From positions 62,001 through 126,000 of IMG/VR virus record IMGVR_UViG_3300035145_003993: DNA of 64,000 nucleotides; one strand, 5' to 3'. The position numbers and the translations under genes are program-made. The first letter of the stretch is position 1. Each line of letters begins with the position of its first letter. Positions 14,879-51,931 of this stretch are shown here, piece by piece. Under the pieces are notes generated by a model, which saw nothing but the letters and a program-made list of their open reading frames with translations, did not search any database and was not told where the DNA came from.

Positions 14879-14931
14879 AGTTATTCCTTAAACTTTAGAG
14901 TTAAAACAATATTATTATATTAAAATAAATT

Positions 14932-15393: not shown

Positions 15394-15395
15394 AT

Positions 15396-15653: not shown

Positions 15654-15830
15654 TTTAATGTCCTTTTTAATTTTTTATAAATTATAAATATATTAAGTTT
15701 TACACAATATATAAGAAAGTTCTATTTAAATTAAATATTTTGATATTTATATTACGTGACAATATTTTTGTGATTTATAATATTTAAATTAAACTAATAA
15801 AGAAAAACTAAAAAAAGAAAAGTAATCAAA

Positions 15831-23371: not shown

Positions 23372-23917
23372 TTATACTTCAATAAAGTCAATAAACGACG
23401 ATTCACGTAATTTTTTCAATACAATCAACTCGCCAACTTTATAATAACACTTAGATAAAGAACTATCAATATCTCCTGAAAGTTGATGATACTCAATATC
23501 AGGCCTCATCATATACTTATCCCACACACTTTTAGCATCATCAGACACTTTACCACGATCACTCATCAAACAAACACCCTCCTCCGACGCCTTTTCAATC
23601 AATATTTCATAAAGTAAAGGCCCAAAACCTTTAGTCACAGGAAAAGTCTCAAATATAAAAAAGTTTCCTGATGATCTTTCACTCAATTCTCTTTCAAAAT
23701 CAATCGCTCCACTCACCACATCATCCTTAACATCATACTCAACTCGACCATAGTCTCCATCCAGATCGTATACAATCTTAACCTTACTCCCGTTTCGAGA
23801 TATTTCTTCAAGATTGTTAACAATCCTTAATATACTCTCTACACTCGCTACTTCAAAGCTCTCACTTAAAGAAACACGCCATCCTTCAACTAACTCTCGA
23901 TACTCTTTTCGATTCAT
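23372..23917 (-). CDS. GNAT-like acetyltransferase-fold protein with leader
   Basis: KGFGPLLYEILIE...LMSDRGKVSDDAKSVWDKY fits GNAT motif A plus S-x-x-A-x-x-W; coding strand is very C-poor. Confidence 0.6.
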   Translation of the reverse strand: MNRKEYRELVEGWRVSLSESFEVASVESILRIVNNLEEISRNGSKVKIVYDLDGDYGRVEYDVKDDVVSGAIDFERELSERSSGNFFIFETFPVTKGFGPLLYEILIEKASEEGVCLMSDRGKVSDDAKSVWDKYMMRPDIEYHQLSGDIDSSLSKCYYKVGELIVLKKLRESSFIDFIEV

Positions 23918-24886: not shown

Positions 24887-25380
24887 TTGTCAATTCTATT
24901 TCCAAATTTATTATATTTGTTACCAAAAAAAGCTTTTCTAAATGAATCAATTTTTTTCTTATTTTCAAGATCAATTATTTTTTTTGAACTTTCTCTTGCA
25001 TCATATAACGATTTTGTTTTTAAATCAAAACCTTCAAGATAACTTATTGCGTCATTCACACATTCTTTAAATTCTATAGGATTCTCACTTTTTGTATGTT
25101 CTTCATATAGAAAATTTATAAATTTATGAAAATGTCCAGGGTCATTATAAACTTCTTTTGTCAAATTACTTAGGTCTTCACCATTAATTTTTACAAAGAC
25201 ACCAGTGTTAGGTGACATATTAATATTAAAGTATTGATCATCTTTTATAGGAAAGTTATTTTTTAATTCTCTTTCCATTTCTTCGAAAAATTTTTCTTTT
25301 GTATTATATTTTGTTATAGAACTAGATTCTTTAATTATTTGTCTTATAAGACTTCTTAATTTGTTCTCTGTTATTCTCAC
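24883..25380 (-). CDS. Hypothetical protein with MRITENKLRSLIRQIIKE leader
   Basis: GTG start with AGGAG SD. Confidence 0.65.
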   Translation of the reverse strand: MRITENKLRSLIRQIIKESSSITKYNTKEKFFEEMERELKNNFPIKDDQYFNINMSPNTGVFVKINGEDLSNLTKEVYNDPGHFHKFINFLYEEHTKSENPIEFKECVNDAISYLEGFDLKTKSLYDARESSKKIIDLENKKKIDSFRKAFFGNKYNKFGNRIDK

Positions 25381-25489
25381 GTTAACTCCTAAATAACTTT
25401 ATTTATAAATCTATATATTATCTTATATTATAAATTAAAGTCTATTCGTGATAAACGTAAGACAATCTTTTTACTTAATACTGAATTTT

Positions 25490-25951
25490 TTAACTCATTA
25501 ATTTTTTAAACTCAACTAAAACTTCTTTAATGTTTTCACTCATTTTTACAATGTCATATAAAAATATATTATTATGATCAATTTCAACTCTTACTACAGC
25601 ATAATAATCAGGTTCTGGGAATTTAAGTTGATATGGTTCTGCTTTCACCAATAAATATCCACACTCGCCCATATTATCTCGACTCCAAATTGCATTATGT
25701 CTAACAAATTCATTTGTAAACAAAGCAGCCGTATATGCATCATGTCCTAAATCCAATCCTAAATCCAATCGATCAGAAATCTTGTGTCCAATAGTAACTA
25801 ATTCGTCTCTAAGCGTATCTTCATCTAATTTCTTTACAAACAAATCAGTAAAAATTTCTTTTTCATCACGATCATGTAGGTTTTCTTCACCATATGACTC
25901 TTTAATTACTTGACGAATAATATTTCTTAATCTACTCTCTGTTATTTTCAT
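25490..25951 (-). CDS. Hypothetical protein with MKITESRLRNIIRQVIKE leader
   Basis: AGGAG SD; last minus-strand gene before the divergence point. Confidence 0.65.
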   Translation of the reverse strand: MKITESRLRNIIRQVIKESYGEENLHDRDEKEIFTDLFVKKLDEDTLRDELVTIGHKISDRLDLGLDLGHDAYTAALFTNEFVRHNAIWSRDNMGECGYLLVKAEPYQLKFPEPDYYAVVRVEIDHNNIFLYDIVKMSENIKEVLVEFKKLMS

Positions 25952-26040
25952 TTTTTTCTCCTAATGAAATCTTATAACTTATAATATATATCTTTTATAA
26001 TATAAAAAAAATTTAATTTATATAAACGTTGTGACTCAAG

Positions 26041-26460
26041 AGCCACTCCTTCTACATCAAAACTCAAACAAAACAGTCATAACACACTTCAAACATTCTT
26101 AAAACTTCAAATATATACACTTTTAAAAATTTCATATAAACCTCTTCAATTCTTATTTAAAATTTGGATCCAAATTTATCTCTGTTAAATCTTTTAATCC
26201 ACTTCAATTAAAACACACATCAACTCAATCAAGTCTTTACTCACACAATTCTCAAATCAAATCACACATACCTCACACCTCCTTCAGCAAACTCAAAAAC
26301 TTTTCAAAATTTTTCTCCGGAAATTTTTCCCGAAAAACCACTTTTTACTTTTTACACTTCGCCACATTTTTTGCCCACATACACACACATATAACACGTC
26401 TTATCTAATACACACTTCTCTCACATTTACACTTTCTCACACTTTCTTTTATATGTGGTA
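26041..26460. other. Non-coding G-depleted (CA/CT-rich) tract
   Basis: 16 G in 420 nt on the + strand (manual count); no ORF >=60 aa. Confidence 0.8.
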
Positions 26461-26543
26461 CAAGGTATTCACTTATACTACATCTCTCGAGTAAAAAATT
26501 TTCTCGGAAAAAAATTGGCTAGTCGGTTAGCGCTTTTTTCGCG

Positions 26544-26638
26544 GTTACACTTCAGAGAGTTAACGCTGGGGCCTCCCCCAGGGGGGCCTCAGAAGCGCCC
26601 AGTTACACCCCGGGGCATAGAGGGGCATCAAGTGTAAC
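26544..26638. repeat. GC-rich palindrome flanked by GTGTAAC boxes in both orientations
   Basis: GGCCTCCCCCAGGGGGGCC hairpin at 26570-26588; GTTACAC at 26544 and 26602; GTGTAAC at 26632. Confidence 0.75.
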
Positions 26639-26689
26639 TCGAGCGATTGAAATACACAAGCTTTCGAGGCATGACCAAATTGATCGGTC

Positions 26690-27005
26690 AAGTGTAACTC
26701 ATCCCTGAAAATGGTATAATAAACCATAAGGGGGGAACAGGAACAACGGATTCCTAAAGGTTAAAATAAAAAAAACCTCAAGCCTTAAAAAACTTTTTGA
26801 AAACTAGGAATAAAAACTTCAGGCATTAATAAGTGTAACCCTATAATAATAGGTTTATAATAAACCATAAGGAACAACGGTTCCAATAAGGACAAATTAA
26901 AAAAATCCTTCAAGTTTAAAAAACTCTTTGAAAATTAGGAAATAAAAACCCAGCATTAATAAGTGTAACTTTTAAATATATAATTTATTATAAACCATAA
27001 GGTAT
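26690..27005 (+). repeat. Tandem about 130-140-bp imperfect repeat, each unit carrying a promoter
   Basis: GTGTAA at 26692, 26833 and 26963. Shared AACAACGG(A)TTCC, TTAAAAAACTyTTTGAAAAyTAGGAA and GCATTAATAAGTGTAAC segments. Confidence 0.9.
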
Positions 27006-27067
27006 AAAGGCCTTATTAAATAATCTTTAACTTACCTACAACCCTATTATAAAAGGATTAAATTAAA

Positions 27068-27679
27068 ATGGAAAACTCAACACTAATGCAACAATTGTTT
27101 CAAGATTACATTCAAAACGGTGGTCAACCTAAAATTACCAGTTTCCGTTTGCATCTTGAAAAGCTAATGAAAACAGAAATCAAGCCCCTTTGCGGAGGTT
27201 CAAGAAGACTTGCCCCAGGAGCTCATGATTGGAGAAACGAATTAAAAGATCGATTTGGAGGTCGAGGTAATAAATGGATGAAAGTTTCCATTGAGGAAAT
27301 TAATCCATCTCTCGATAAATTTGATGCTGAAGGTTATGATACAGAAGATTACCGATCTCATATCGAACGAGCCGGTTTCGCTTGGATTCGATATTATGGA
27401 CCAAAGCTTAATAATGGAATTAAGGTCGCGGCATTTACTGTTCATACATTTGATGCAACAATTTATCAGCCTCAAACTCAGCACTATATACCGGTTGATC
27501 GTTTGGATGAAACAATTGAACCATTAAATGGAACTCCATTCAGCCTAAAGCTTGAAGAAGCTGGATCGATCGTTCAAAATGATACTGATGATGAAGTTAC
27601 TCCTTTAGATGAGGAATCCGCGAACTTAAACGATGAAATCCTAAGTCAAATCCAAGATTTGGAACTAGAGGACCTCTAA
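27068..27679 (+). CDS. Early protein, paralogous family A (copy 1)
   Basis: FRLHLEK..KPLCG..WR..L..RF.GRG.KW..AWIRYYGP..LNGTPFSLKLE, acidic tail; AAAGGA SD. Confidence 0.85.
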   Translation: MENSTLMQQLFQDYIQNGGQPKITSFRLHLEKLMKTEIKPLCGGSRRLAPGAHDWRNELKDRFGGRGNKWMKVSIEEINPSLDKFDAEGYDTEDYRSHIERAGFAWIRYYGPKLNNGIKVAAFTVHTFDATIYQPQTQHYIPVDRLDETIEPLNGTPFSLKLEEAGSIVQNDTDDEVTPLDEESANLNDEILSQIQDLELEDL

Positions 27680-27935
27680 GATCACCGGGATAATATAAAC
27701 TCCCATGATGCCCGTATCGTTTGATTGAAGTCATAAATAAATCTGAACTGATAGTTTGGATGGTCAAACGATAAAACTTTACTTTGATTATTTGCTTATA
27801 ATATAAGTGTAATGATAAATGAATCGTTCAACATTTAAAATGATTGTTCGATCGATTAAGAACTTTTAGTGTAATTGATCGTTTGATTAATTATAATTTA
27901 TAATCTCAACTCATTCATTTAAGGAATCGTCGTTA

Positions 27936-28190
27936 ATGGAAGAATACTCAACCCCTCTATGTCTTATTACATCGTTCTTTTTGTCAATCTTCGCTTACAC
28001 TTCGTCTCAGTCAAACGAATTACCTATCCAGCATTTAGAGTTCGATGAAATGATCATTGAACCGAGTGAATCGATGAAACGATCAATACAGATAATCGAA
28101 TTCGACGATCATGTCATCGTTTCTAGGTCAATCGCTTTAGCTGACAAAAACGAAGATGACGATGAAGACGACGAAGATTATGGATGCTAA
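27936..28190 (+). CDS. Small secreted/membrane protein with acidic tail
   Basis: Hydrophobic N-terminus, repeated IQ..EFD motif; downstream of promoter 27869. Confidence 0.6.
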   Translation: MEEYSTPLCLITSFFLSIFAYTSSQSNELPIQHLEFDEMIIEPSESMKRSIQIIEFDDHVIVSRSIALADKNEDDDEDDEDYGC

Positions 28191-28336
28191 TATCTAGTCA
28201 ATCGTTATAAAAGTAATGCTTCAAGATTCAAACGACCAGCTTCATCACATTTTCTCTCAAGTGTAACTCATCGTTTTATGAAGTATAATATATCATAAGG
28301 TCCAACAAATTAATCAACCACCCAAAAGGATTTAAT

Positions 28337-28498
28337 ATGTACAAAGTAATTAATCAAGAACTAGAAAAGTTTGTTAAATCATTTAAAACTCGTCAAGAGG
28401 CTGAAGTTTATATCGCTCGACAAGGGAACAAGACTTACGAACTACTTGATCGTCAATACCCAGTTTATATCATCGCATCTTCATCACCTTCTAAATAA
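28337..28498 (+). CDS. 53-aa hypothetical early protein (not in the track)
   Basis: MYKVINQELEKFVKSFKTRQEAE...; AAAGGA SD after promoter 28261. Confidence 0.65.
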   Translation: MYKVINQELEKFVKSFKTRQEAEVYIARQGNKTYELLDRQYPVYIIASSSPSK

Positions 28499-28508
28499 GG
28501 ATAATGTC

Positions 28509-28766
28509 ATGGATTTTAATCAAGATACACTCAATGATCGTTTATATAAAGAACATCCAGAACTCAGCTCGAATTGGTCGTTTATGGATTGGGACGATGA
28601 CAAAGCAACGATAACATATCAATTCGATGATGGATCTGATGATGAGGTCTTCATTTATAAAGACGGATCGATTCATATTTCAGAAAAAACGATATACGAA
28701 ATGAATAAGATCTTAATGAATCAAGTTACATATCGATATTTCAATCATTCTGTATCATATCACTAG
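28509..28766 (+). CDS. Hypothetical early protein (start MDFNQD)
   Basis: AAGGA SD at 28497; C-terminal part of track ORF 28371-28766. Confidence 0.6.
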   Translation: MDFNQDTLNDRLYKEHPELSSNWSFMDWDDDKATITYQFDDGSDDEVFIYKDGSIHISEKTIYEMNKILMNQVTYRYFNHSVSYH

Positions 28767-28984
28767 TCTGGCTCATATCTTAAGTGTCTAGGTGTTACAG
28801 CATCCTCGATCGTCGGCTCTAGGTTAGGTGGTATATCCATCTATCCTTCTTAGAAAAGACTCGAAGCCAGATCAAGCTTCAAACGATGAAGTTATTTAAT
28901 CAAGTGTAACTCTCATTCGTATAGAGTATAATAAACCATAAGGCCGGCCTAATCAATCATCTATTCATCCAAAGGATTAACATC

Positions 28985-29251
28985 ATGAAAAAAATTACAA
29001 AAGATCAATTCTACAGACTAATCATGTCCTGTAACCCAGAACTTCATAAACTTCCTCAACACATCCAAGATGACATCTCCGATCTACGTAAAGTCACTAA
29101 GAATGGCAAAGCTCATCTACTTCTTACTCATCCAGAAGGCCAAGATAATTACTTCCTTGATTACGTCGAAGTAGATATGCTATGTGAAGAAGAAATTGAT
29201 GAAACTAGACTACATGCTAAAGAAAATAGAGGACGTCTTGTCGCCATTTAA
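28985..29251 (+). CDS. Hypothetical early protein
   Basis: Promoter 28904, AAAGGA SD. Confidence 0.7.
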   Translation: MKKITKDQFYRLIMSCNPELHKLPQHIQDDISDLRKVTKNGKAHLLLTHPEGQDNYFLDYVEVDMLCEEEIDETRLHAKENRGRLVAI

Positions 29252-29442
29252 TAAGTTTAATTAAACTTAAGATCCTACAAGTTACTAGTATATCTTATAT
29301 CTACTTTAATATTACCTTTTGAGTACTTCAAGATTCAAACGGCCAGTTTCATCACATAAGTGTAACTCTTAAATCCGAATGGTATAATATATCATAAGGT
29401 CCAATAAATCAATCAACCAATTAATCTACAAAGGATTTAAAT

Positions 29443-29637
29443 ATGAAAGTTCGAAAAAGAGCATCTCAAACAAATAATATCTCAGTTTGGGCAGAAGCTA
29501 ATAAAAAAGGTGGTTTCATTATTTACATGGGGATCAAAGGAACAGACGCTAAATCGATCGTTGGGGCCGCGGCATACAAAGAAACTCTCGAATATAATTT
29601 AAGAAAAGCTAAGTTCAAGCACGGAATCAAACTTTAA
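29443..29637 (+). CDS. Hypothetical early protein (basic)
   Basis: Promoter 29360, AAAGGA SD. Confidence 0.7.
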   Translation: MKVRKRASQTNNISVWAEANKKGGFIIYMGIKGTDAKSIVGAAAYKETLEYNLRKAKFKHGIKL

Positions 29638-29815
29638 GATAACAGATCGTTCGGTATACTTCTAACTTTAACCTCATCTTTAAAATGTCTAGATAAAACA
29701 TCGCTCGGCTTCATCACAAATTTCTCTTAAGTGTAACTCTTAAATCTGAATGGTATAATATATCATAAGGTCCAATTAATCAAACAAACCAATCAAATCA
29801 AAAAGGATTTAAAAC

Positions 29816-30454
29816 ATGAATAACTCAAACCTACAAACCTCTGAACAGGAGAACAGCATGTCTACAATTCAAAAACTTTTCCAAGAATATCTCGAATCAG
29901 GCGGTCAACCAAAACTTACAAGCTTCAGATTTCATATCGAAAAACTAATGAAGACCGATATAAAACCTTTATGCGGTCGATCTGGAAAGTCTTCATCAGG
30001 TAATGATTGGAGAAAAGATCTTATGAATCGATTTAAAGGTCGCGGATCAAAATGGGTCTTTGTAAGTCTCGAAGAAATTAAAGATACTCTCGATCGTTTT
30101 GACCAAGAAGGAATTGATACAGAAGATTACAGATCTTGGACTGAAAAGAAACAAAAAGCTTGGATTAGATTTTATGGTCCAAGGCTCGATAATGGAATCA
30201 AAGTCGCGGCATTTACAGTTCATACCCTAGATTCAACAATCTATCAGCCTCATACATTACATTATATTCCAATCGATCGTCTAGATGAAACAATTACTCC
30301 ATTAAACGGGACTCCCTTCAGTCTCAAGCTTGAAGTTGATGATGTCCAACAGGAAAATGATACTGAATCAAACGAAGAAATTATCGAATATATCTCTAAA
30401 TTTGATGAAGATCTCTTACAAGGACTCGAAGATTTACAGAACGATGATCTATAA
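29816..30454 (+). CDS. Early protein, paralogous family A (copy 2)
   Basis: Co-linear with 27068-27679, with long identical stretches (GIKVAAFTVHT, PLNGTPFSLKLE). Confidence 0.88.
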   Translation: MNNSNLQTSEQENSMSTIQKLFQEYLESGGQPKLTSFRFHIEKLMKTDIKPLCGRSGKSSSGNDWRKDLMNRFKGRGSKWVFVSLEEIKDTLDRFDQEGIDTEDYRSWTEKKQKAWIRFYGPRLDNGIKVAAFTVHTLDSTIYQPHTLHYIPIDRLDETITPLNGTPFSLKLEVDDVQQENDTESNEEIIEYISKFDEDLLQGLEDLQNDDL

Positions 30455-30660
30455 ATCTAATTAAATCTTAATCCAGATCTTAGAAATCATTCCTCGTTAG
30501 ATGCTTCAATACTACAAGTAATCGCTGCATCACACTCAAGATGTATATTTTGTCGATTGATGAAATATACAAGACAAACATACGATTAAATCAGTTTATA
30601 ACTTTTTTGAATTGTTATATGAACAATCATATTTCTCATAAAGTAAAGTCTGGAGCCAAA

Positions 30661-30825
30661 ATGGATATTGTATCGTTATCATTTCTTACTAAATCTATTG
30701 TACCAGTGTGTCTAATGATGATTCCTATCATGACAATTTCTGGAACAGGGCCCGTAAGGTCTCTAATGACGGGTCTATCGATCTACTTTGGATTTATTAT
30801 CCTTAACTCTTTACACGTAATTTAA
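30661..30825 (+). CDS. Small membrane protein (likely start 30661)
   Basis: GGAG SD before MDIVSL; two hydrophobic segments. Confidence 0.4.
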   Translation: MDIVSLSFLTKSIVPVCLMMIPIMTISGTGPVRSLMTGLSIYFGFIILNSLHVI

Positions 30826-30871
30826 ACTAAACGATCTACACTACAACATTATAATATTACAAGGAAAAAAC

Positions 30872-31102
30872 ATGTCTGAGACACCTTTAAAGTTTATTAA
30901 ATGCGCTACGATGAATTCTGGATCACCTGTCACTATTTCTTTTCAATCAGTTTCGCATGTCGTTAAAAACAAGTCTGCGCACGATGAAAATAGAAGTACA
31001 ACTTGGATAAACTTCCATTCAGGTAAATCAATTCATGTAGACACTCCGTACGAAAAAGCTGAGTTATTATTTACTAGATTTTTAAATGAGACTTCAATTT
31101 AA
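30872..31102 (+). CDS. Small protein, family B (FlbD-like pattern)
   Basis: VSH..NK..HD..TWINFHSGKSIHV; paralogue of 31820-32047. Confidence 0.7.
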   Translation: MSETPLKFIKCATMNSGSPVTISFQSVSHVVKNKSAHDENRSTTWINFHSGKSIHVDTPYEKAELLFTRFLNETSI

Positions 31103-31251
31103 TTAACTTATCTAAATCAATCTGTGAAAGTGCCTTGCCCAGTTTATAACTCGCATCATCAAAAATGAAAGTGTAACTATTATTTATTTTGAGTATAATA
31201 TATCATAATCCAATTCAAATCAACCACTAACTAAAATAAAAAAGGATTAAA

Positions 31252-31416
31252 ATGAGTTCCAAACAAAAACAACAATTCCTAGATTCAATTAATGAACTTG
31301 TAAAACGATCAAACGAAGAGTATAAGAAAGGAAATATAAAAGAAGCCAAGCGTTTATCAAGGGACGCAAATCAATTAAACCTTCACTTTAAATCTATGCT
31401 TAATGAAATGATCTAA
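31252..31416 (+). CDS. 54-aa helical hypothetical protein
   Basis: Promoter 31171, AAAGGA SD; MSSKQKQQFLDS... Confidence 0.6.
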   Translation: MSSKQKQQFLDSINELVKRSNEEYKKGNIKEAKRLSRDANQLNLHFKSMLNEMI

Positions 31417-31544
31417 TGACAAAACCCAATAAGAAATTAAAAGAATTAAACCACGAGATTCAATCTGAAAGAAGATTGAAAGGTTTAACTGGTAGGCTTG
31501 AAGATTTAATTAGACAAAGAAATCTTCTTCTTGCAAAGAAATAG
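31416..31544 (+). CDS. 42-aa basic peptide
   Basis: TAATG coupling with the upstream ORF. Confidence 0.45.
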   Translation: MTKPNKKLKELNHEIQSERRLKGLTGRLEDLIRQRNLLLAKK

Positions 31545-31662
31545 ATTTTATATTAATGAAAGTTTTAAAATATTATTTTTGTGTAATTAATTAAAACCAT
31601 TGTTATAATATACCATAATCCAATTCAAATCAAACAACCACCAAAAAAAAGGATTTAAAATT

Positions 31663-31815
31663 ATGCCTCTATTATTATTATCTGCACTTATTATTTACGG
31701 ATTAATTTCTTTTGCAGTTGGTTTAATAATACTACATCCTGTTCCAACATTGTTCGCAACAGCTTTATTCATTACTTTTAACTTTATCAATACTTTAATC
31801 CTTAGAAAGGTCTAA
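31663..31815 (+). CDS. 50-aa membrane peptide
   Basis: Promoter 31581, AAAGGA SD; entirely hydrophobic. Confidence 0.55.
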   Translation: MPLLLLSALIIYGLISFAVGLIILHPVPTLFATALFITFNFINTLILRKV

Positions 31816-31819
31816 TCTT

Positions 31820-32047
31820 ATGACAACAACAGCACTCAGAACTTACACAACAGTTAATTCATCATCAGAAATCACAGTCGCTCTAAATTCAGTATCTCAT
31901 ATTATTGAAAATAAAAACCCTCATGATGATACTTCATTAGATCAAAGAACATCGTGGATTCATTTCCATTCAGGAAAGTCAGTTCATGTAAGTGAATCAT
32001 TCGAAAACGTCAATGATGACTTAGTAGAGTTTTATAAAACTCGCTAA
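31820..32047 (+). CDS. Small protein, family B (copy 2)
   Basis: VSHII.NK.PHD..TSWIHFHSGKSVHV. Confidence 0.7.
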   Translation: MTTTALRTYTTVNSSSEITVALNSVSHIIENKNPHDDTSLDQRTSWIHFHSGKSVHVSESFENVNDDLVEFYKTR

Positions 32048-32059
32048 CAAGGAATATTA

Positions 32060-32239
32060 ATGGTAAGAAAATTATTTGATGCTTCTCTCTTTTTTATAAT
32101 GTTTGCTTTAGCTTTTTTAGCTTTTATTAATCTTCTAGAGCAATATCCAACCTTTACGTATTCTGTAATTGCTATTTTTACTCTTGCAGAAGCTTATGAT
32201 CGATCTCTTCCAAAATACAAACAATACTTGAAACGTTAA
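32060..32239 (+). CDS. 59-aa membrane peptide
   Basis: AAGGA SD; two TM-like segments. Confidence 0.5.
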   Translation: MVRKLFDASLFFIMFALAFLAFINLLEQYPTFTYSVIAIFTLAEAYDRSLPKYKQYLKR

Positions 32240-32247
32240 GGAATAAA

Positions 32248-32538
32248 ATGACTGTATCTAATAGAATTAAAATCGAATGGGAATTTGATATATCAGTAAA
32301 TGAAGAATTACAAAATCGTCTAAACTTATCTGAAGGGCAGATATATGAAATGCTTGAAGACGAAGACGAAGAATCAAGACTACATAGTTTATGTTGTGGA
32401 GAAACAGGAACTCCAGAATGGATAGATCTAGATCTTTTCTTTGAAGACCCTCGAAGTATAAGTGAAGATGAAATTACAGAAACTTTATCTGATGATTATG
32501 GTTGGCTGATTAAATCATGGGAATGGCAATATGTGTAA
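32248..32538 (+). CDS. Acidic hypothetical protein
   Basis: IKIEWEFD...LSDDYGWLI; the stop codon lies in the next promoter's -35 box. Confidence 0.7.
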   Translation: MTVSNRIKIEWEFDISVNEELQNRLNLSEGQIYEMLEDEDEESRLHSLCCGETGTPEWIDLDLFFEDPRSISEDEITETLSDDYGWLIKSWEWQYV

Positions 32539-32656
32539 CCTTAATTAATTTAGCGTATAATGTCTCATAAGGGGAATTTAGAATGAAACTTATTTTTATG
32601 TTACTACTACTTTATATTATCTTCCATGCCAACACACCAAGAAAAAGGAAATAACA

Positions 32657-32896
32657 ATGAATATAATTAAATACTTGAAAGAATTCTTCTACGCATTTTC
32701 AGCAGGTTGCGTTTTATTTTCTTTTGTATCACTCATCATTTTAATTATCCTCGCTCCATTTGGATTATGTATTTATCTCGGAGATACTTTAGGATATCAC
32801 AGCGTAATTTCATTTAGTTCTGCTATTATGTGTTATGCAATATACTGGATAATCATCAGACACTTTAACTTAATTGATATCAAAGGTTTACAATGA
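32657..32896 (+). CDS. Membrane protein
   Basis: Two TM segments; AAAGGA SD. Confidence 0.6.
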   Translation: MNIIKYLKEFFYAFSAGCVLFSFVSLIILIILAPFGLCIYLGDTLGYHSVISFSSAIMCYAIYWIIIRHFNLIDIKGLQ

Positions 32897-33168
32897 ATGA
32901 TAATGAAAAGATCTCTTTTACAACAGGAGCTAATGGAGAAATCCTTGTATGGGAAACTCCAAAGGGTGAAGCAGCAAAAATTGAACGCAATCTTGCGGAA
33001 AGAATTGATTATTACGTCGCATTTCAGCCTCTCAAAGAAAACAATCTCGTCTTCATTCCCAAAAGAAAAACTGTTGAATCAATTATACAAGCTTGGGATC
33101 AATTCCAATCTCACTTAGCTATTCAATCTGATTCTTATATTTTATTCAACCCAAATGAAGATGTATAA
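32893..33168 (+). CDS. Hypothetical protein
   Basis: ATGA overlap with the upstream gene. Confidence 0.6.
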   Translation: MNDNEKISFTTGANGEILVWETPKGEAAKIERNLAERIDYYVAFQPLKENNLVFIPKRKTVESIIQAWDQFQSHLAIQSDSYILFNPNEDV

Positions 33169-33177
33169 TACTCTTAA

Positions 33178-33297
33178 CTACTTTTCCGTAGATCTTGTCG
33201 CTGTTTTTTATATCTTGAATAATGCTTGATATTTCAACACTTAGTATCATCACAAAAGTGTAACTTTAATTTTTTTTGAGTATAATACACCATAAGG
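33178..33297 (+). repeat. About 120-bp promoter-cassette direct repeat, copy 1 (copy 2 at 34310-34427)
   Basis: Shared CTACTyTTCCGTAGATCTTrTCGCTGTTTTTT...ATCACAA(AA)GTGTAACTTTAATTTTTTTTGAGTATAATA.A.CATAAGG. Confidence 0.9.
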
Positions 33298-33348
33298 CAA
33301 TTACCTTTAAAATTAATTACTCCCCCACCAAAAAAAGGAAAATACAGC

Positions 33349-33750
33349 ATGATTACTGATTATATTATTGCTTCAGTTATGATTAACAATGTTCCCCCAT
33401 CAGCTTATGAACAAGGCTTCGATGATTTTTTACAGGATATGGATGATCCAGTTCTTTTCTCACACTTTGTAAATAAATACAATGTTACTGAAGGCATAAT
33501 AATTAAAACTCATGAAAATAATTCCGGTTATAATGTACCCTGTATTACAGCCTATGTTGATTATAATACTTGGAATACTTGGTCTGAGGATATGAAAGAA
33601 TTTTGGAATATGATGTTCCACCCCGAAATTCAGAAAAAAGAAAAAAATGAATGGGGAATTGATTGTATACTACCAAAGCTATCAGATGAAGAAATTGATA
33701 ACATCATTATTCCGCTAGAAAAACTCAAATCAAGATTTCCTAATGTGTAA
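33349..33750 (+). CDS. Hypothetical early protein
   Basis: Promoter 33258; ends in GTG TAA, the next -35 box. Confidence 0.7.
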   Translation: MITDYIIASVMINNVPPSAYEQGFDDFLQDMDDPVLFSHFVNKYNVTEGIIIKTHENNSGYNVPCITAYVDYNTWNTWSEDMKEFWNMMFHPEIQKKEKNEWGIDCILPKLSDEEIDNIIIPLEKLKSRFPNV

Positions 33751-33822
33751 TTTAAATTAACCCTGTTTTATAATAAATCATAATCCAATAAAAACCATCA
33801 TTTAATTCAAAAGGATAAAAAC

Positions 33823-34227
33823 ATGGAAAACAAAATCAATCTATCAAATGAAATCCGCTATGTTGTTGATTATAGATCTTGTCCAAGTGGCTTAGGCTCA
33901 ATCTTCTTAGATGAAGTTGGAGGGAATAAACAGATCCTCATTACTGATCAAGATACTGGTCCTAAGGATATGTCTGAAGCTAAAGAAACATTCAATCCGG
34001 ACTCGATGCCTGATTTCGTTGATCACATCCCGCTTGACTCCCAGTTCTGGGATATCATTAACCAATGCCTCGGAGCTATCCTCGTATCACATCATGTTAA
34101 ATACGTTATCGATTCAGAACTAGCTTATGATTGTCCAGATCTTACTGATCCCGATGGTGGTGATAATAAAACAATCTTTACAATTCAAAATTGGCTAAAA
34201 GCTCGTGATATCAAAGGTATTTTATAA
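33823..34227 (+). CDS. Hypothetical early protein (family shared with the C-terminus of 40714-41337)
   Basis: ILITD..PDFVDHIPLD..Q.L..IL. Confidence 0.7.
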   Translation: MENKINLSNEIRYVVDYRSCPSGLGSIFLDEVGGNKQILITDQDTGPKDMSEAKETFNPDSMPDFVDHIPLDSQFWDIINQCLGAILVSHHVKYVIDSELAYDCPDLTDPDGGDNKTIFTIQNWLKARDIKGIL

Positions 34228-34309
34228 ATTAGATTCGAATATGTAAAAAACATACTTCAGGTATATTACCCTATCTAATCGTAATAATCACTAAAACAGA
34301 CGATTTTAT

Positions 34310-34427
34310 CTACTCTTCCGTAGATCTTATCGCTGTTTTTTTGTATCTAAAAAATGCTCAGTATTATATCACACTGTTTCATCACAAGTGTAACTTTAAT
34401 TTTTTTTGAGTATAATATATCATAAGG
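34310..34427 (+). repeat. About 120-bp promoter-cassette direct repeat, copy 2
   Basis: See 33178-33297. Confidence 0.9.
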
Positions 34428-34464
34428 TAATTCAATCAACCATTCAATCAAAAAGGAAACAAAC

Positions 34465-34755
34465 ATGACTTCAATAAGAACAACTCAAATCGGTGATACT
34501 CTCGAAATCAAAAAGATTACACAAATATCTGGTCATCATAAAGATTATCTGTTCTTAACTAATCATTCAGATAATCCTAATTGTCCATATCCAAAAACAA
34601 CAAACATCTCTCGTATAGTTCACCCGGGAACAAAGGTTGCAGTTATCGCTAAAGGCAGACCACAAGATAAATACAACGAAAGCTTTATTACTGTAGTTCA
34701 TAATAATTTAATTTTCGATATTCGTTCATCAGATCTAAGAAGATTCTGTAAGTAA
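34465..34755 (+). CDS. Hypothetical early protein (SH3/KOW-like)
   Basis: IGDTLEIK..GTKVAVI; promoter 34388. Confidence 0.65.
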   Translation: MTSIRTTQIGDTLEIKKITQISGHHKDYLFLTNHSDNPNCPYPKTTNISRIVHPGTKVAVIAKGRPQDKYNESFITVVHNNLIFDIRSSDLRRFCK

Positions 34756-34826
34756 CTCTTAAGGTGTGTAACTCTGCTCTCTCTCCTATTATAATATATT
34801 ATACCAACAATACAAAGGATTCTACA

Positions 34827-35195
34827 ATGAATAATCAAATCTCCCTCCAACAATGGAATGAACTCATGTCTCTCGTCAAAACAAGCGCTGCAACTGAAAA
34901 ACAAATCAAAGGTGCTATCTACTCCGGAACAGATGAACTTAAGAACGGCAACCAACGACACTACTGCTACGATAACCTCGATCGGTATGATGTCCCCGGT
35001 CTAGATCTTACAATCAAAAAAGATTCAGACGTTGGAACTCTCACAGTCTACAACGGCTCAGAACAAGCAAGAGCTCCTATTACATTTGAACAAGGCCTCT
35101 TCATCGCTACTAACTTCTTCAAATACGAAGGATACGATATGTCAGAACAAATCGTTTGTGATTGGGTTATGGATGGCAATAAGAGTGTCTTTTAA
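34827..35195 (+). CDS. Hypothetical early protein (start MNNQIS)
   Basis: AAAGGA SD after promoter 34766. Confidence 0.65.
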   Translation: MNNQISLQQWNELMSLVKTSAATEKQIKGAIYSGTDELKNGNQRHYCYDNLDRYDVPGLDLTIKKDSDVGTLTVYNGSEQARAPITFEQGLFIATNFFKYEGYDMSEQIVCDWVMDGNKSVF

Positions 35196-35209
35196 GAAAT
35201 TAAACAAAA

Positions 35210-35359
35210 ATGAATTTCGAAAAAGAAAAGCAAGCATTAAGAACCCTATACGCTTCTAAGAAGCAATGGTTTCAGTCGACTCCGACATACGGATGTTGGA
35301 TTTATCCGGACATTTATTACATTAAATTAAAAGATCTAGAGAATAAATACTCTAATTGA
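35210..35359 (+). CDS. 49-aa hypothetical peptide
   Basis: MNFEKEKQALRTLYASKKQW...; weak SD. Confidence 0.35.
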   Translation: MNFEKEKQALRTLYASKKQWFQSTPTYGCWIYPDIYYIKLKDLENKYSN

Positions 35360-35567
35360 TAATGATTGTCAAAATCAGTACGAGTCTCGAGCTAAGAGTC
35401 GAGTTCTTTGGCAGTTTATTAAAAAAGAATTATCTGTTTAGCTCTGTTAATGATTTTAAATTAAGTTAATAGGTTTTATCGTATAAGTAAAAAAGATTAA
35501 AACAGGTGTATTTAAGTCCATTTGAGACTATAATAAATATATAATGTTTTATAGAGGAAAAGAGAAG

Positions 35568-35828
35568 ATGAAAAGATTGTTATTTTTGGTGTTGATTTTG
35601 TTTAGTGTGTGTTGTAGTGAAGAGGCATTGGGAGAAGACGAGTTGAGGGTTGAGTGTAAGAGACCGGGAGGAAGGGTGGAGGTATATCGAGTGAAGATAA
35701 AGAGTTTGTTTGATTTGACTCGGTCGAGGAGTGCCTTTTGGCATTTTGTGGGTGTGAGGAAGAGTGATGGAAAGAGAGTGGAGGTTGTATCGAACGAGTG
35801 TTATGTAGAGAGGGAGTTGAAGAGATGA
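35568..35828 (+). CDS. Putative lipoprotein in a C-depleted tract
   Basis: MKRLLFLVLILFSVCC signal/lipobox. Confidence 0.6.
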   Translation: MKRLLFLVLILFSVCCSEEALGEDELRVECKRPGGRVEVYRVKIKSLFDLTRSRSAFWHFVGVRKSDGKRVEVVSNECYVERELKR

Positions 35829-36151
35829 GTGTTATATTGGAGATAAGGGATTTAGAAAGAGGAAGACGTTTATTTAAGATGCAGCATGAAAGTGTTGATT
35901 GTAGTTTTGTTGAGTGGAAGAGGGAAGAGACTTTAGCAAGGGAGTTGGGATATGAAGATTCATTAGAAGAGATTCATAGTGATTGGGAGCTTGATGCAGG
36001 AATGATGATATCGATGTTGAAGAGATATAGGGATAGGGGAGTTGAGAGAGTAGATTGGAAGTGTAAAGGTGAGGGATTATCTATTGGAGAGATTATAGAG
36101 GATTTAACGTATGAGTTAGAATGTAGTTGGGATTCTTGGATTGATGATTAA
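35825..36151 (+). CDS. Hypothetical acidic protein in a C-depleted tract
   Basis: ATGA overlap; G-ending codons dominate. Confidence 0.55.
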   Translation: MSVILEIRDLERGRRLFKMQHESVDCSFVEWKREETLARELGYEDSLEEIHSDWELDAGMMISMLKRYRDRGVERVDWKCKGEGLSIGEIIEDLTYELECSWDSWIDD

Positions 36152-36361
36152 AGAGATGTTTGGATATTCTATTGTATAAGAGATATATTATGTGTAGAGT
36201 TAGATTTTTACAATAGAGGTTATAAAAAGATTTTTTATTATAGTCTGAATAGATTAGAGATTTAATTTTGTGTTATATGATTTGAGTGTAATTAAAATAA
36301 AAAGTGATTATAATGAATTATAAGGTTTAATAAACAGCCCAACCAAAAAAGGAAGCTTAAA

Positions 36362-36583
36362 ATGGTCGAAAACAATGAGGAAAATAGATTAAGACTTGTA
36401 AACGAGTTAATGGAAAATATTGATTATGATCTGCTCTGGCATTTTGCTAAAGAAAAAATGTTAGATGATTATAAAACTAATGATGACTGCTTCCAAGAAG
36501 ATTGGTATCATAAAATTGTTTTGGATCTTGGAGAACAAGAATTAAATAAAAATATAAGTGATCGAGAATTCAATGAACAATAA
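36362..36583 (+). CDS. Hypothetical early protein (homologous to the N-terminus of 40714-41337)
   Basis: NEENRLRLVNELM...NDDCFQEDW. Confidence 0.7.
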   Translation: MVENNEENRLRLVNELMENIDYDLLWHFAKEKMLDDYKTNDDCFQEDWYHKIVLDLGEQELNKNISDREFNEQ

Positions 36584-36782
36584 TCTTCATACAAGTTTGT
36601 TAAGTTTAGATAAAGACAATAGTGATTTTAACTATAGAGATAGTAATACTTCTATTGAGTATTCAAAGAAAGTTCTTGGTCTAAGATATTTTATTTTTAA
36701 TCCTGTTTCAAATGATAGAAAGGACAAATTATGTTTCATTTCTCAGAGCAATGGAGAATCCCAACAGAACAGCAAGCTTTAA
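36573..36782 (+). CDS. Hypothetical protein
   Basis: Overlapping ORF in the operon. Confidence 0.4.
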   Translation: MNNNLHTSLLSLDKDNSDFNYRDSNTSIEYSKKVLGLRYFIFNPVSNDRKDKLCFISQSNGESQQNSKL

Positions 36783-37024
36783 TTAATCCTGCTTCTGAGT
36801 TTGTTGGAGAAACGAAGATTTTTAGAAAGCCTTCATTTAAAGATTTAATTGATAAGGGTGTTAAGATAAGAAGGACTAGATGGTGTCGTGGTGTAGCTAA
36901 TATTGAAAACTATGCTAATTCCTTAGAAGATGTAAGTGGTTGTAATGAATATCGAGCATATCATTATTTTGATAGTGAATATAAGATATGGTGTACTGAA
37001 TGGTATGAACTTTCTCATCCGTAA
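36731..37024 (+). CDS. Hypothetical protein
   Basis: AAAGGA SD. Confidence 0.55.
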   Translation: MFHFSEQWRIPTEQQALINPASEFVGETKIFRKPSFKDLIDKGVKIRRTRWCRGVANIENYANSLEDVSGCNEYRAYHYFDSEYKIWCTEWYELSHP

Positions 37025-37033
37025 AGGATAAAG

Positions 37034-37330
37034 ATGAAACATATAAAAAGATTAAAGAAAATTCAGATTATTGATAAATGGTTATCTATGATTGGTGGTG
37101 AAAGAGAAGTTGAAGGTGAATTGATATGTTATAGTAATCATACAGGAAACTTTAAGCTTTATAATGACGGAAGTTTATATTATTATGATCTTTTGCTAGC
37201 AGAAATAATTGATGGAGTACATACAGTATATGATCATACAGCATCTGGTGGAAGTTTTATTTCGAAATCTACAAGTTATCATGTTAACTACTTAAAAGAA
37301 TTTGCGTTAAACGTAGTAAGTTATAATTAA
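37034..37330 (+). CDS. Hypothetical protein
   Basis: AAAGGA SD; SKSTSYHVN motif. Confidence 0.6.
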   Translation: MKHIKRLKKIQIIDKWLSMIGGEREVEGELICYSNHTGNFKLYNDGSLYYYDLLLAEIIDGVHTVYDHTASGGSFISKSTSYHVNYLKEFALNVVSYN

Positions 37331-37431
37331 GAGTTTATATTATTTGAGTGTAATTAAAATAAATTATAGGTATAATAAACCATAAGGTTCAATTAATCAA
37401 ACAAACATTCATTCAAAAAAGGAAATAAAAA

Positions 37432-37884
37432 ATGGATCCAGCAATTACAAGACTTAATGAAAAAATCTGTGAAGAGTATGAAATAAGGATTACCTGTGAC
37501 CAAAGTCATATTATTGATAGATATGAAGAAGGTGAAATAGAAGAAGTTTCATTTATTGAAGGTTTCTATAACAGTAAAAGAGAATCAACCGTTGAAAATA
37601 TCGGATTAAATGTTAAAGAAATTGTTGAACATGTTCTTAAGTCATATACACAATTTAATTCATTCGAAGAGTATTTTAATGATAACTTCAACTATTCAGA
37701 TGATTATTTTATTGTACGTAGGCAAGTTAATAAAGACCGAAATGAACCAACTATAGGTGATGTCGAAATGTGGAAAATTGGTGAAGAAGATTTGTATGCG
37801 CAATATACGCATATAAAGCTTACAATTAATTCAGCACTATTAAGTGTCGATATGATTAGATCTTTAATTGAAATGGAAGGTTAA
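37432..37884 (+). CDS. Early protein family C (copy 1)
   Basis: Paralogue of 43016-43495 (YEEGE.EE, FNY.DD, E.WK.GE..LY). Confidence 0.8.
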   Translation: MDPAITRLNEKICEEYEIRITCDQSHIIDRYEEGEIEEVSFIEGFYNSKRESTVENIGLNVKEIVEHVLKSYTQFNSFEEYFNDNFNYSDDYFIVRRQVNKDRNEPTIGDVEMWKIGEEDLYAQYTHIKLTINSALLSVDMIRSLIEMEG

Positions 37885-51361: not shown

Positions 51362-51443
51362 AATTTATTATACATAGTTTATTTCTTTGATAAAATAAAA
51401 TTAGAGCTTCTTATGATAAAAAAATATTTTAAGAAGTTCATTT

Positions 51444-51516: not shown

Positions 51517-51542
51517 TTTATTAAATTTTTTAAGAGTTTAAA

Positions 51543-51908: not shown

Positions 51909-51931
51909 AATATATAGATAAAGGAAAACAG

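What the first reader, a model, noticed from the sequence alone, without database searches (positions are those of the whole stretch)
26041..36200. Mirror-image skew tracts bracket a compositionally distinct about 9-kb block (possible long terminal repeat)
Seen: left flank 26041-26460 has 16 G/420 nt on +; right flank 35581-36120 has 25 C/540 nt on +. Both flanks are therefore G-rich and C-poor when read outward. The enclosed block is GATC-rich and its last genes (34.8-35.2 kb) have C>=G on the coding strand, flipping abruptly near 35.4 kb. Inference: 26.6-35.4 kb is a terminal redundancy or origin domain whose flanks experience strand-specific mutation, e.g. persistent ssDNA during repeat duplication.
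Basis: partly seen in the sequence, partly recalled or inferred. Interest (0 to 1): 0.62.

Follow-up and report, generated by a model that had tools for sequence, protein, structure and literature searches.

The report
Cytosine-free transcripts flank phage early genes
In a large marine T4-type phage and its relatives, the stretches that flank the early-gene cluster and read away from it on each side are written almost without cytosine whatever they encode; this is real and unusual, but it does not mark a terminal repeat.

Summary
These are the only two stretches in the 211-kb phage genome with |GC skew| above 0.6. GATC is about twice as frequent as expected in the block.

The pattern is not chance and not an assembly artefact. 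A 239-kb relative and a 278-kb metagenome contig have the same mirrored pair around a syntenic block, and three shorter contigs show its left half.

The block is a cluster of small early genes of unknown function. It holds 14 of the window's 23 copies of one strong sigma-70-like promoter motif, all on the + strand. Metatranscriptome contigs cover it.

The two tracts lie where the first outward-reading transcription units are predicted to start. Cytosine avoidance follows position, not gene family. Unrelated genes sit in the tracts in different phages. One protein family is encoded normally inside one phage's block and C-poor in another's tract. Synonymous sites carry the bias, and it fades over 1.5-4 kb.

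The terminal-repeat reading is not supported. The large terminase is T4-like, which implies headful packaging. Contig depth in two independent samples shows no doubling at the left boundary.

I favour R-loop-prone, transcription-primed replication start zones (about 0.3). Rho-proof leaders and a purely mutational footprint are close rivals.

The parts
26030..26466 (-). Left tract. On the - strand it is G-rich and C-poor (C 3.8%, G 27%), with no ORF over 25 codons in this phage. It runs from the predicted P_L start to a hairpin at about 26030-26047.
   Evidence: It is 88-93% identical per 100 nt to a marine contig (about 94% over 26082-28826), while the genes to its left differ between contigs. 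No contig of two metatranscriptome runs lies on 26100-26850.
26283..26329 (-). A/T-tract element of about 45 nt, nearly invariant, containing the tract's few remaining cytosines (a TTCCGGAG core). Candidate DNA-unwinding or protein-binding site.
   Evidence: Invariant between this phage, marine contigs and G001. One copy per genome at the motif stringency used, and two related copies left of the block in L062. The predicted RNA hairpin is not conserved in G001.
26465..26484 (-). P_L, a predicted leftward promoter (-10-like TATAAG at 26472-26477). The C-free zone begins within about 20 nt downstream.
   Evidence: The 20-mer is identical in G001 although the surrounding sequence is diverged. Prediction only; no transcript start was mapped.
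26540..26700 (.). Divergent control region. It holds a GC-rich dyad (26568-26588), two inverted copies of the GTGTAAC promoter element (26544-26550, 26602-26608), and forward copies at 26632 and 26692.
   Evidence: DNA fold z -2.3. The G/C runs are conserved in G001 and L062.
26692..27060 (+). Three tandem promoter units about 130 nt apart with no ORF. Each is followed by a short conserved hairpin (GGAAC..GTTCC type). Possible small RNAs or a promoter stack for the first gene.
   Evidence: the same arrangement is in G001. Metatranscriptome contigs begin at 26850 and 26919.
26692..35413 (+). Early-gene block: about 25 small + strand ORFs with no family match, including the paralogue pairs 27068-27679/29816-30454 and 30872-31102/31820-32047. 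It holds 14 copies of the motif GTGTAAY-N14-20-TATAAT.
   Evidence: 23 matches in the window, all on +, 0.09 expected. No Pfam family above its curated cut-off and no PHROG hit. Gene order is conserved in G001 and L062. RNA-library contigs cover it.
35386..35413 (+). Terminator-like hairpin with a T-run at the end of the block, exactly where the skew flips.
   Evidence: The flanking sequence is partly conserved in L062.
35482..35534 (+). P_R region: a -10-like TATAAG (35482-35487), then a GGTGTAT element (35505-35511) and TATAAT (35529-35534).
   Evidence: The module is conserved in G001 and L062. Prediction only.
35405..36340 (+). Right tract. The + strand is G-rich and C-poor (800 nt from 35541: C 4%, G 31%). 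It ends at the next promoter (36286).
35568..35828 (+). 86-codon ORF for a lipoprotein-like protein (signal peptide and Cys), encoded with 13 C in 261 nt.
   Evidence: It is intact and 99% identical in five other assemblies, with a homologue at the same position in L062. No Pfam hit.
35825..36151 (+). 108-codon ORF of unknown function, encoded with 13 C in 327 nt.

Best explanation
Shown or strongly supported (about 0.75): the window comes from a roughly 240-kb marine phage of the T4 superfamily. The 26.7-35.4 kb block is its immediate-early gene cluster, driven by a dense array of strong sigma-70-like promoters. The two skew tracts are not repeat boundaries. They lie where the first outward-reading transcription units on each side are predicted to begin. 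In the left-hand unit of this phage and of G001, the near-absence of C starts at the predicted transcript start. The bias is strongest in the first 0.5-1 kb and fades over 1.5-4 kb. It is imposed on whatever sequence lies there, coding or not.

Inferred, my favoured mechanism (about 0.3; the confidence given here is for this full statement, mechanism included): RNA from P_L and P_R is G-rich and nearly C-free, and is copied from a C-rich, G-poor template. Such RNA stays hybridised to its template as an R-loop, whose RNA primes leading-strand DNA synthesis outward. The displaced G/T-rich strand then offers the replicative primosome a place to load. This would make the pair a two-sided, transcription-primed origin comparable to T4 oriF and oriG. 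Forks launched there would travel in the same direction as transcription in both arms. Repeated single-strandedness of the displaced strand may add a mutational push in the same direction.
For: The tracts are unique in the genome and the counts are exact. The same mirrored pair occurs in G001 and in L062, and the left half occurs in L061, L068 and L069.

The bias is positional. The right tract encodes two unknown small proteins here, a pentapeptide-repeat protein in G001 (Pfam E 1e-20) and four ORFs in L062. The left tract is non-coding here and largely coding in G001 and L062. One protein family (41% identity, E 4e-49) has C 24% inside G001's block and C 9% in L062's tract.

Synonymous sites carry the bias. 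Among A/G-ending codons G is used 0.67-0.76 in right-tract ORFs (0.46 in L062's left-tract ORF) against 0.13-0.17 elsewhere, and C at four-fold sites is 0.00-0.02.

The C-free zone begins just after a promoter-like 20-mer that is identical in G001. It decays outward from 0.7-0.9 to about 0.2. All 23 early-type promoters point rightward and none serves the left arm.

For the R-loop origin specifically:
- The terminase is T4-like, and two T4 origins are driven by transcription from middle promoters (PMC2988021).
- G-rich, C-poor non-template DNA is the classic R-loop-promoting composition (established knowledge).
- The right tract is the most hybrid-favouring 400-nt window in this genome and in L062 (nearest-neighbour parameters taken from memory).
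- The left tract is untranslated in this phage, and partly so in G001. It carries a unique, conserved A/T-tract element 140-180 nt downstream of P_L.
- The locus is the main point where gene orientation diverges.
Against: No transcript start, RNA:DNA hybrid or replication start was measured. All promoters are predictions.
- The left tracts, and G001's right tract, are not outstanding in the hybrid-stability calculation.
- Most tract sequence in L062, and the right tract here, is translated ORF. Ribosomes oppose R-loops.
- T4's own origins are not known for such skew (my knowledge).
- Metatranscriptome contigs cover the block but not the left tract; this is weak evidence, since a hole in contigs proves little.
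- The more distant relative G002 lacks the tracts.
- A search for the T4 gp59 helicase loader found nothing, but its control also found nothing, so it is uninformative.
- Genome-wide, GC skew follows gene orientation rather than distance from this locus.
Confidence: 0.3

Rival explanations
1. Rho-proof leaders. Rho loads on C-rich, G-poor, ribosome-free RNA. Removing C and adding G in the first kilobase lets polymerase leave the early cluster and reach the downstream delayed-early genes without a protein antiterminator. The reverse strand of each tract is C-rich and G-poor, so it would also stop inward antisense transcription.
For: The composition is the exact inverse of a rut site, in both C loss and G gain. 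The bias maps to transcript units and starts at the predicted start site. The left tract is a roughly 430-nt untranslated leader here, which would be a prime Rho target. In T4, Rho-dependent sites lie between immediate-early and delayed-early genes (PMC2988021). No early-type promoter serves the left arm, so read-through from P_L could matter. The block's own messages have C>=G, so they would be Rho-sensitive.
Against: The host is unknown and may lack Rho or depend little on it. Translated ORFs are already shielded by ribosomes, so kilobase-scale recoding of proteins looks excessive. I know of no precedent and found none. A smooth decay over several genes is not an obvious prediction.
Confidence: 0.2
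2. A purely mutational footprint. The sense (non-template, or displaced) strand next to two very active start points spends much time single-stranded. It accumulates strand-specific changes (C to T, A to G) in every infection cycle, and the composition itself has no function.
For: The bias is positional and independent of the gene. It is strongest at synonymous sites. It decays smoothly with distance across gene borders, most clearly in L062 (0.89, 0.68, 0.58, 0.49, 0.40, 0.33, 0.25). Vertebrate mitochondrial DNA is a precedent for exposure-time gradients that reshape amino-acid use (established knowledge).
Against: At four-fold sites T falls (0.28-0.32 against 0.41-0.47) while G rises six- to eight-fold. 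Deamination should raise T. The inner edges are sharp and coincide with a promoter and a terminator-like hairpin. The very heavily promoted block shows the opposite tendency, C>=G on the sense strand. The amplitude is far above anything else in three genomes.
Confidence: 0.2
3. Immunity to a cytosine-dependent RNA or single-strand DNA nuclease or deaminase. The first outward genes and RNA must survive an enzyme that needs C in its site, such as a host toxin endoribonuclease (ACA, ACY or GCU types) or a phage-made shut-off nuclease. The C-richer early messages would be destroyed.
For: C is removed almost completely (1-5%) while other bases remain. Tract genes look like defence or exclusion functions: a pentapeptide-repeat protein, which may act as a DNA mimic, in G001 and a lipoprotein here and in L062. 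The block messages are relatively C-rich.
Against: It does not explain the strong gain of G or the gradual decay. No candidate nuclease was identified. The non-coding left tract would need a separate role.
Confidence: 0.08
4. Boundaries of a long direct terminal repeat that the assembler collapsed, as in T5, SPO1 or Kayvirus, where the repeat carries host-takeover genes.
For: The block resembles such repeats in content: small early genes with strong promoters (papers listed). The assemblies are compatible with a collapsed repeat: G001 closes on itself with a 141-bp overlap.
Against: Contigs spanning the left boundary and contigs inside the block have equal depth in two independent samples. The terminase is T4-like. 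Resection from ends at the block edges would expose the wrong strand (inference). The left tract co-varies with the block rather than with the flank.
Confidence: 0.03

Closest known systems
T4 immediate-early gene regions with very strong sigma-70 promoters
   Same: Many small non-essential-looking ORFs, each with its own strong -35/TGn/-10-type promoter and all in one direction. The phage is in the T4 superfamily by its terminase. The cluster is followed by genes reached by extension of early transcripts.
   Different: The proteins have no detectable relatives in Pfam or PHROGs. The upstream promoter element is GTGTAAC rather than the T4 or E. coli -35. I know of no cytosine-free flanking units in T4 and found none in the literature searches.
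Transcription-primed (R-loop) origins: T4 oriF/oriG, ColE1 RNA II, the mitochondrial LSP/CSB region
   Same: A promoter reads into a region where G-rich RNA on a C-rich template can persist as a hybrid. The left-hand RNA is untranslated and several hundred nucleotides long, with an A/T-tract element downstream of the promoter.
   Different: There are two mirrored units 9 kb apart. The tracts run 0.5-2 kb and are often protein-coding. Only the right tract stands out in the hybrid-stability calculation. No hybrid or initiation was measured.
Rho utilisation (rut) sites and the T4 immediate-early/delayed-early boundary
   Same: The tracts sit at the junction between early genes and downstream operons, and the relevant variable is the C-to-G ratio of nascent RNA.
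   Different: The sense-strand composition is the inverse of a rut site. It would prevent termination rather than cause it, through bulk composition rather than a protein or a discrete RNA element.
Long terminal repeats with host-takeover genes (T5 first-step-transfer region, SPO1, Kayvirus)
   Same: A block of about 9 kb holding small early genes with strong promoters.
   Different: No depth doubling at the left edge and a T4-like terminase.
Replication-associated GC skew and exposure gradients (bacterial chromosomes, vertebrate mitochondrial DNA)
   Same: Mirror polarity with the G-rich strand reading outward, decay with distance, and an effect on amino-acid use.
   Different: The amplitude is 0.7-0.9 over about 1 kb. 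T is not enriched. The rest of the genome's skew follows gene orientation, not distance from this locus.

Membership tests
Long direct terminal repeat (T5/SPO1/Kayvirus type) | Two-fold read depth over the repeat in a collapsed assembly | tested here: not met
   Contig mean depths were 27.5 (boundary-spanning) against 27.4 (interior) in the source run, and 12.8 against 12.6 and 13.9 in an independent run. Doubling would give ratios of about 0.80 and 0.64. Left boundary only; contig means, not per-base depth.
Long direct terminal repeat (T5/SPO1/Kayvirus type) | Fixed physical ends (read-start pile-ups) at the repeat edges | not testable with these tools
   All 24 runs found are held only as contigs. 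Read laying reported no places where molecules begin or end, which contigs cannot show in any case.
Long direct terminal repeat (T5/SPO1/Kayvirus type) | Terminase of a clade that makes long exact terminal repeats | tested here: not met
   The best hits of the 544-aa large terminase are T4-superfamily phages: Flavobacterium phage immuto 40%, T4-like cyanophages and a pelagimyophage, with T4-like coliphages apparently among the many Escherichia records. Judged by similarity only; no tree was built.
Long direct terminal repeat (T5/SPO1/Kayvirus type) | The repeat carries early host-takeover genes with strong host-type promoters | tested here: met
   14 motif promoters and about 25 small ORFs, with RNA-library contigs over the block. 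Timing was not measured.
Transcription-primed (R-loop) origin, T4 oriF/oriG type | A promoter reading into the element | tested here: inconclusive
   Conserved promoter-like sequences at 26465-26484 (-) and 35482-35534 (+). No start site was mapped, and RNA contigs are absent from the left tract.
Transcription-primed (R-loop) origin, T4 oriF/oriG type | A downstream DNA-unwinding element | tested here: inconclusive
   A unique conserved A/T-tract element lies at 26283-26329. Unwinding was not computed or measured, and no clear counterpart was found on the right.
Transcription-primed (R-loop) origin, T4 oriF/oriG type | A persistent RNA:DNA hybrid | tested here: inconclusive
   Hybrid-minus-duplex stacking energy ranks the right tract first in G000 and in L062, but not in G001, and never ranks the left tracts high (parameters from memory). 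Physical hybrids cannot be tested here.
Transcription-primed (R-loop) origin, T4 oriF/oriG type | DNA synthesis initiates at the site | not testable with these tools
   This needs infected-cell marker-frequency or nascent-strand data.
Rho-dependent terminator (rut) on the inward-reading strand | C-rich, G-poor, unstructured RNA of 80 nt or more | tested here: met
   The + strand of the left tract has C 27% and G 4%. The - strand of the right tract has C 36% and G 5%. This is a composition test only; neither inward transcription nor the presence of Rho in the host is known.
Replication origin marked by a GC-skew switch | The sign change of the skew is independent of gene orientation | tested here: inconclusive
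   The window's cumulative skew minimum is at about 35 kb, not at the gene-orientation switch at 26.5 kb, and the + strand block has slightly negative skew. Genome-wide, however, skew tracks gene orientation.
Known RNA families (Rfam) | A match to a curated covariance model | tested here: not met
   No match at E<=1 over 25000-37500 on either strand.

The most novel reading that the evidence does not exclude
The two tracts are a device encoded in base composition rather than in a motif. Writing the first kilobase of two outward operons with almost no cytosine, even at the cost of the proteins' amino-acid make-up, would fix the fate of the nascent RNA. That fate would be either a stable R-loop that starts replication on both sides of the early genes, or complete immunity to Rho and to C-dependent nucleases. 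Either would be a new kind of phage control element, in a lineage widespread in the ocean.
Probability: 0.4. Interest if true: 0.8.

Novelty: new variant of a known kind. Interest (0 to 1): 0.62.

Why it matters
Base-composition asymmetry this strong is normally seen only in organelle genomes or in short regulatory sites. Here G-C skew is 0.7-0.9, and C at four-fold synonymous sites is about 1-2%. It is confined to two transcript-sized stretches and overrides protein composition. It is also conserved in position while the genes underneath change. This gives a natural experiment for asking how bulk composition of a nascent transcript controls R-loop formation, replication start, or Rho and nuclease sensitivity.

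If the favoured reading holds, it would also locate the replication origin and the early-to-delayed-early switch of an uncultured group of marine jumbo phages. As a practical point, it shows that a block of early genes bracketed by odd composition need not be a terminal repeat.

Tried and rejected
1. Terminal repeat: rejected as the best reading. Depth is equal in boundary-spanning and interior contigs in two runs, and the terminase is T4-like.
2. Near-identical phage records: none in the phage collection.
3. Known RNA families and tRNAs in 25-37.5 kb: none.
4. Protein families for block, tract and flank ORFs: nothing in Pfam above a curated cut-off and nothing in PHROGs, apart from the pentapeptide-repeat protein in G001, DUF6435 and an AAA_33 domain in L062.
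5. Structured RNA in the left tract: z is only -2.4, and the central hairpin is not kept in G001.
6. Tracts as arrays of the promoter's upstream element: AGTGT is 2-3 sd above shuffles here and in G001 but not in L062. I left this as a weak lead.
7. R-loop thermodynamics as a common property of both tracts: holds only for the right tract, in two of three genomes.
8. Simple deamination: four-fold sites lose T and gain G.
9. T4 gp59 loader search: blank, with a blank control, so uninformative.
10. Relatives through the first block protein in IMG/VR: only G001. The metagenome scan gave the useful ones.
11. A search of IMG/VR for a left-tract motif found only G001.
12. Literature searches for a described equivalent found none.

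Not used: the large protein searches, structure prediction and complex prediction, because nothing in the claim rests on them.

Full report
**What the window is.** The window is bases 62001-126000 of a 211,364-bp IMG/VR virus record. The record is classed linear and estimated 84% complete, with GC 27%. Its 544-aa large terminase matches T4-superfamily phages best: Flavobacterium phage immuto at 40%, Microcystis phage Mel-JY01, T4-like cyanophages and a pelagimyophage. Among 2,947 matching records many are Escherichia phages. A DinG/XPD-like helicase and PhoH lie in the left arm. All runs that hold the sequence are marine or wetland metagenomes.

**Check of the observation.**
- Over the whole genome, 420-nt windows have GC skew between -0.45 and +0.44 for 99% of positions.
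- Only two segments exceed |0.6|: window 25821-26521 (to -0.75) and 35361-36461 (to +0.80).
- In 200-nt bins the tracts are about 26000-26460 and 35400-36340, and the right-hand flip is abrupt.
- GATC is 2.25 times expectation in the block against 1.29 elsewhere. TCGA is enriched and TGCA depleted. The relative G001 shows the same three biases.
- The block's + strand genes have C>=G, unlike the rest of the genome.

**The pattern is conserved.** A relative with an 86% identical helicase, G001, is a 239,550-bp assembly that closes on itself by a 141-bp overlap. Only two of its segments reach a skew of 0.75 or more: 204981-206160 (-) and 214781-215980 (+), with one weaker segment at 0.53. They bracket an 8.6-kb block of higher GC.

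A more distant relative is L062, part of a 277,787-bp metagenome contig, whose first block protein is 50% identical to ours. It has a - tract at 5801-6360 and a + tract at 13781-15820 reaching 0.94. They surround a block with the same gene order. Three shorter contigs that reach the left side show -0.4 to -0.6 there. A still more distant phage, G002 (46% helicase identity, GC 43%), has no such tracts. Many Tara and other marine contigs are 90-94% identical to parts of the block and cross both boundaries. The feature is therefore not an assembly artefact.

**What the block is.** It holds about 25 small + strand ORFs, including two paralogue pairs. None matches a Pfam family above its curated cut-off, and none matches PHROGs. 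The motif GTGTAAY-N14-20-TATAAT occurs 23 times in the window against 0.09 expected. All copies are on the + strand, with 14 in the block and 9 in the right arm. With the stricter form, all 18 copies in the genome lie in window 26.7-55.8 kb. Most are followed by a G-poor, CA-rich leader and an AGGA-type ribosome site.

This is the layout of T4 immediate-early regions, whose promoters combine several strong recognition elements (PMC2988021). Contigs from two metatranscriptome runs cover the block from 26850 or 26919 onward. They do not cover 26100-26850, although a DNA run from seawater does. The block is thus present in RNA libraries. The left tract was not seen there, which is weak negative evidence.

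**What the tracts are.** On the - strand, a promoter-like 20-mer at 26465-26484 is identical in G001 although its surroundings have diverged. In both phages the C-free zone begins within about 20 nt downstream of it. In this phage the zone runs about 430 nt with no ORF over 25 codons. It ends at a hairpin near 26030-26047.

It contains a nearly invariant A/T-tract element of about 45 nt at 26283-26329. That element is unique in each genome at the stringency used, and L062 has two related copies. Between P_L and the first block promoter lie a GC-rich dyad and inverted copies of the GTGTAAC element.

On the right, a terminator-like hairpin at 35386-35403 ends the block. A conserved promoter module follows at 35482-35534. 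The C-poor stretch then runs to the next promoter at 36286. It encodes an 86-codon lipoprotein-like ORF and a 108-codon ORF. Both are intact in five other assemblies.

**The bias is positional, not a property of a gene family.**
- In G001 the right tract encodes a 208-aa pentapeptide-repeat protein (Pfam E 1e-20) unrelated to our two ORFs.
- In L062 the right tract encodes four ORFs, and the left tract is a 167-codon ORF.
- In G001 the first leftward gene is also C-poor.
- One family (41% identity, E 4e-49) lies inside G001's block with C 24% and skew 0.02, and in L062's right tract with C 9% and skew 0.54.

Codon analysis of the right-tract ORFs from three genomes gives these figures:

| Measure | Right-tract ORFs | Elsewhere |
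|---|---|---|
| G among A/G-ending two-fold codons | 0.67-0.76 | 0.13-0.17 |
| C among C/T-ending two-fold codons | 0.04 | 0.15-0.31 |
| C at four-fold sites | 0.01-0.02 | 0.04-0.16 |
| G at four-fold sites | 0.28-0.42 | 0.05-0.12 |
| Amino acids that require C | 6-12% | 11-20% |

L062's left-tract ORF is milder: G 0.46 among A/G-ending codons, C 0.12 among C/T-ending codons, and no C at four-fold sites. Reading outward from each promoter, the skew falls from 0.7-0.9 to about 0.2 within 1.5-4 kb. The decline is smoothest in L062.

**Terminal repeat.** Only contigs were available for every run, so per-base depth and termini could not be read. Contig mean depths still bear on the question.

| Run | Contig | Depth |
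|---|---|---|
| Source run | 7,655 nt, about 23.56-31.2 kb (flank plus block) | 27.5 |
| Source run | 2,098 nt, interior to the block | 27.4 |
| Independent seawater run | Boundary-spanning | 12.8 |
| Independent seawater run | Interior (two contigs) | 12.6 and 13.9 |

If the block were doubled, the boundary-to-interior ratios would be about 0.80 and 0.64. Both observed ratios are about 1.0. With the T4-like terminase, this makes a collapsed long terminal repeat unlikely. I put it at about 0.03. There is a further argument from polarity. Resection from ends placed at the block edges would expose the strand opposite to the C-poor one.

**Mechanism.** The following is shown:
- The bias has the same polarity as the predicted outward transcription.
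- On the left, in two genomes, it starts at the predicted transcript start.
- It acts at synonymous sites and decays with distance.
- It does not depend on the gene that lies there.

Several processes fit a nascent RNA that is G-rich and C-free.

*R-loop, transcription-primed origin (about 0.3, my preference).* Two T4 origins are driven by transcription from middle promoters. G-rich, C-poor non-template DNA is the classic R-loop-prone composition. The left-hand RNA is untranslated in this phage and has a conserved A/T-tract element downstream of its promoter. Forks started outward would run with transcription in both arms. Using stacking energies recalled from memory, the right tract is the most hybrid-favouring window here and in L062. 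The left tracts and G001's right tract are not.

*Rho-proof leaders (about 0.2).* The composition is the inverse of a rut site. In T4, Rho-dependent sites separate immediate-early from delayed-early genes.

*A purely mutational footprint of single-strand exposure (about 0.2).* The gradient and the gene-independence fit. The fall of T with the rise of G at four-fold sites does not.

*Immunity to a C-dependent nuclease (about 0.08).*

None of these could be tested physically here.

**Comparison with the known, and novelty.** The block is an ordinary kind of thing: a T4-style early gene cluster, though of unknown proteins. The paired cytosine-free flanks are not something I know from T4, T5, SPO1 or jumbo phages. 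Four literature searches found no description of them. I class the finding as a new variant of a known kind, namely transcription-linked strand asymmetry at an early or origin region. The open possibility (about 0.4) is that this is a control device encoded in composition, which would deserve more interest.

Noticed in passing
window 26692-27060; G001 = L008:18250-18790: Three tandem promoter units about 130 nt apart with no ORF. Each is followed by a short conserved hairpin (GGAAC..GTTCC type). The arrangement is also present in G001. Metatranscriptome contigs start inside this array. They may be small RNAs or a promoter stack for the first early gene.
   Followed up: partly
window 27068-27679 and 29816-30454; L062:7102-7788 and 9947-10609; L008:18798-19379 and L009:2137-2769: The first block gene (about 200 aa, acidic tail, no family match) is duplicated within the block in all three phages. 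It has 86 invariant columns among six sequences. This repeat is where metagenome assemblies break.
   Followed up: partly
window 33769-35270 versus 35270-37400: Against marine contig L012, the last block genes are only 54-83% identical, while everything from about 35270 rightward is 91-100% identical. A recombination mosaic edge coincides with the block's right end. On the left, the genes beyond about 26080 differ between contigs.
   Followed up: partly
L009:6985-7611 (G001): A pentapeptide-repeat protein (Pfam E 1e-20), possibly a DNA mimic, is the first gene of the right-hand unit in the relative and is encoded almost without C.
   Followed up: partly
window 26692-35413 and G001 206200-214780: The block has a shared oligonucleotide signature in both phages: GATC and TCGA about two-fold over expectation, and TGCA at 0.4-0.6 of expectation against 1.3 elsewhere. 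The cause is unknown. It could be a methylation or restriction-related signal, or a codon-pair effect.
   Followed up: partly
window 23372-23917 (-), genome 85341-86120: The third most skewed region of the genome (to -0.57) is a 181-aa gene 2.5 kb out in the left arm. By eye its C-terminal half resembles G001's first leftward gene. Several left-arm proteins also share a similar-looking N-terminal motif.
   Followed up: no
window 13244-14878 (-): The helicase near the locus is DinG/XPD-like by its matches to solved structures (E about 1e-4). Its nearest phage relatives are jumbo phages (phage G, Tunturi_5, XacN1). E. coli DinG is known to act on R-loops, but no link was tested here.
   Followed up: partly
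window 51443-53906: Three tRNA genes (Met-CAT, Thr-TGT, Lys-TTT) lie in the right arm.
   Followed up: no
window 26041-26460 (-), 35541-36340 (+); G001 tracts: The pentamer AGTGT, the core of the promoter's upstream element, is 2-3 sd above dinucleotide shuffles in the tracts here and in G001, but not in L062.
   Followed up: partly
window 36286-59394: Early-type promoters in the right arm use GTGTAAT, while most block promoters use GTGTAAC. This is a possible subclass difference.
   Followed up: no
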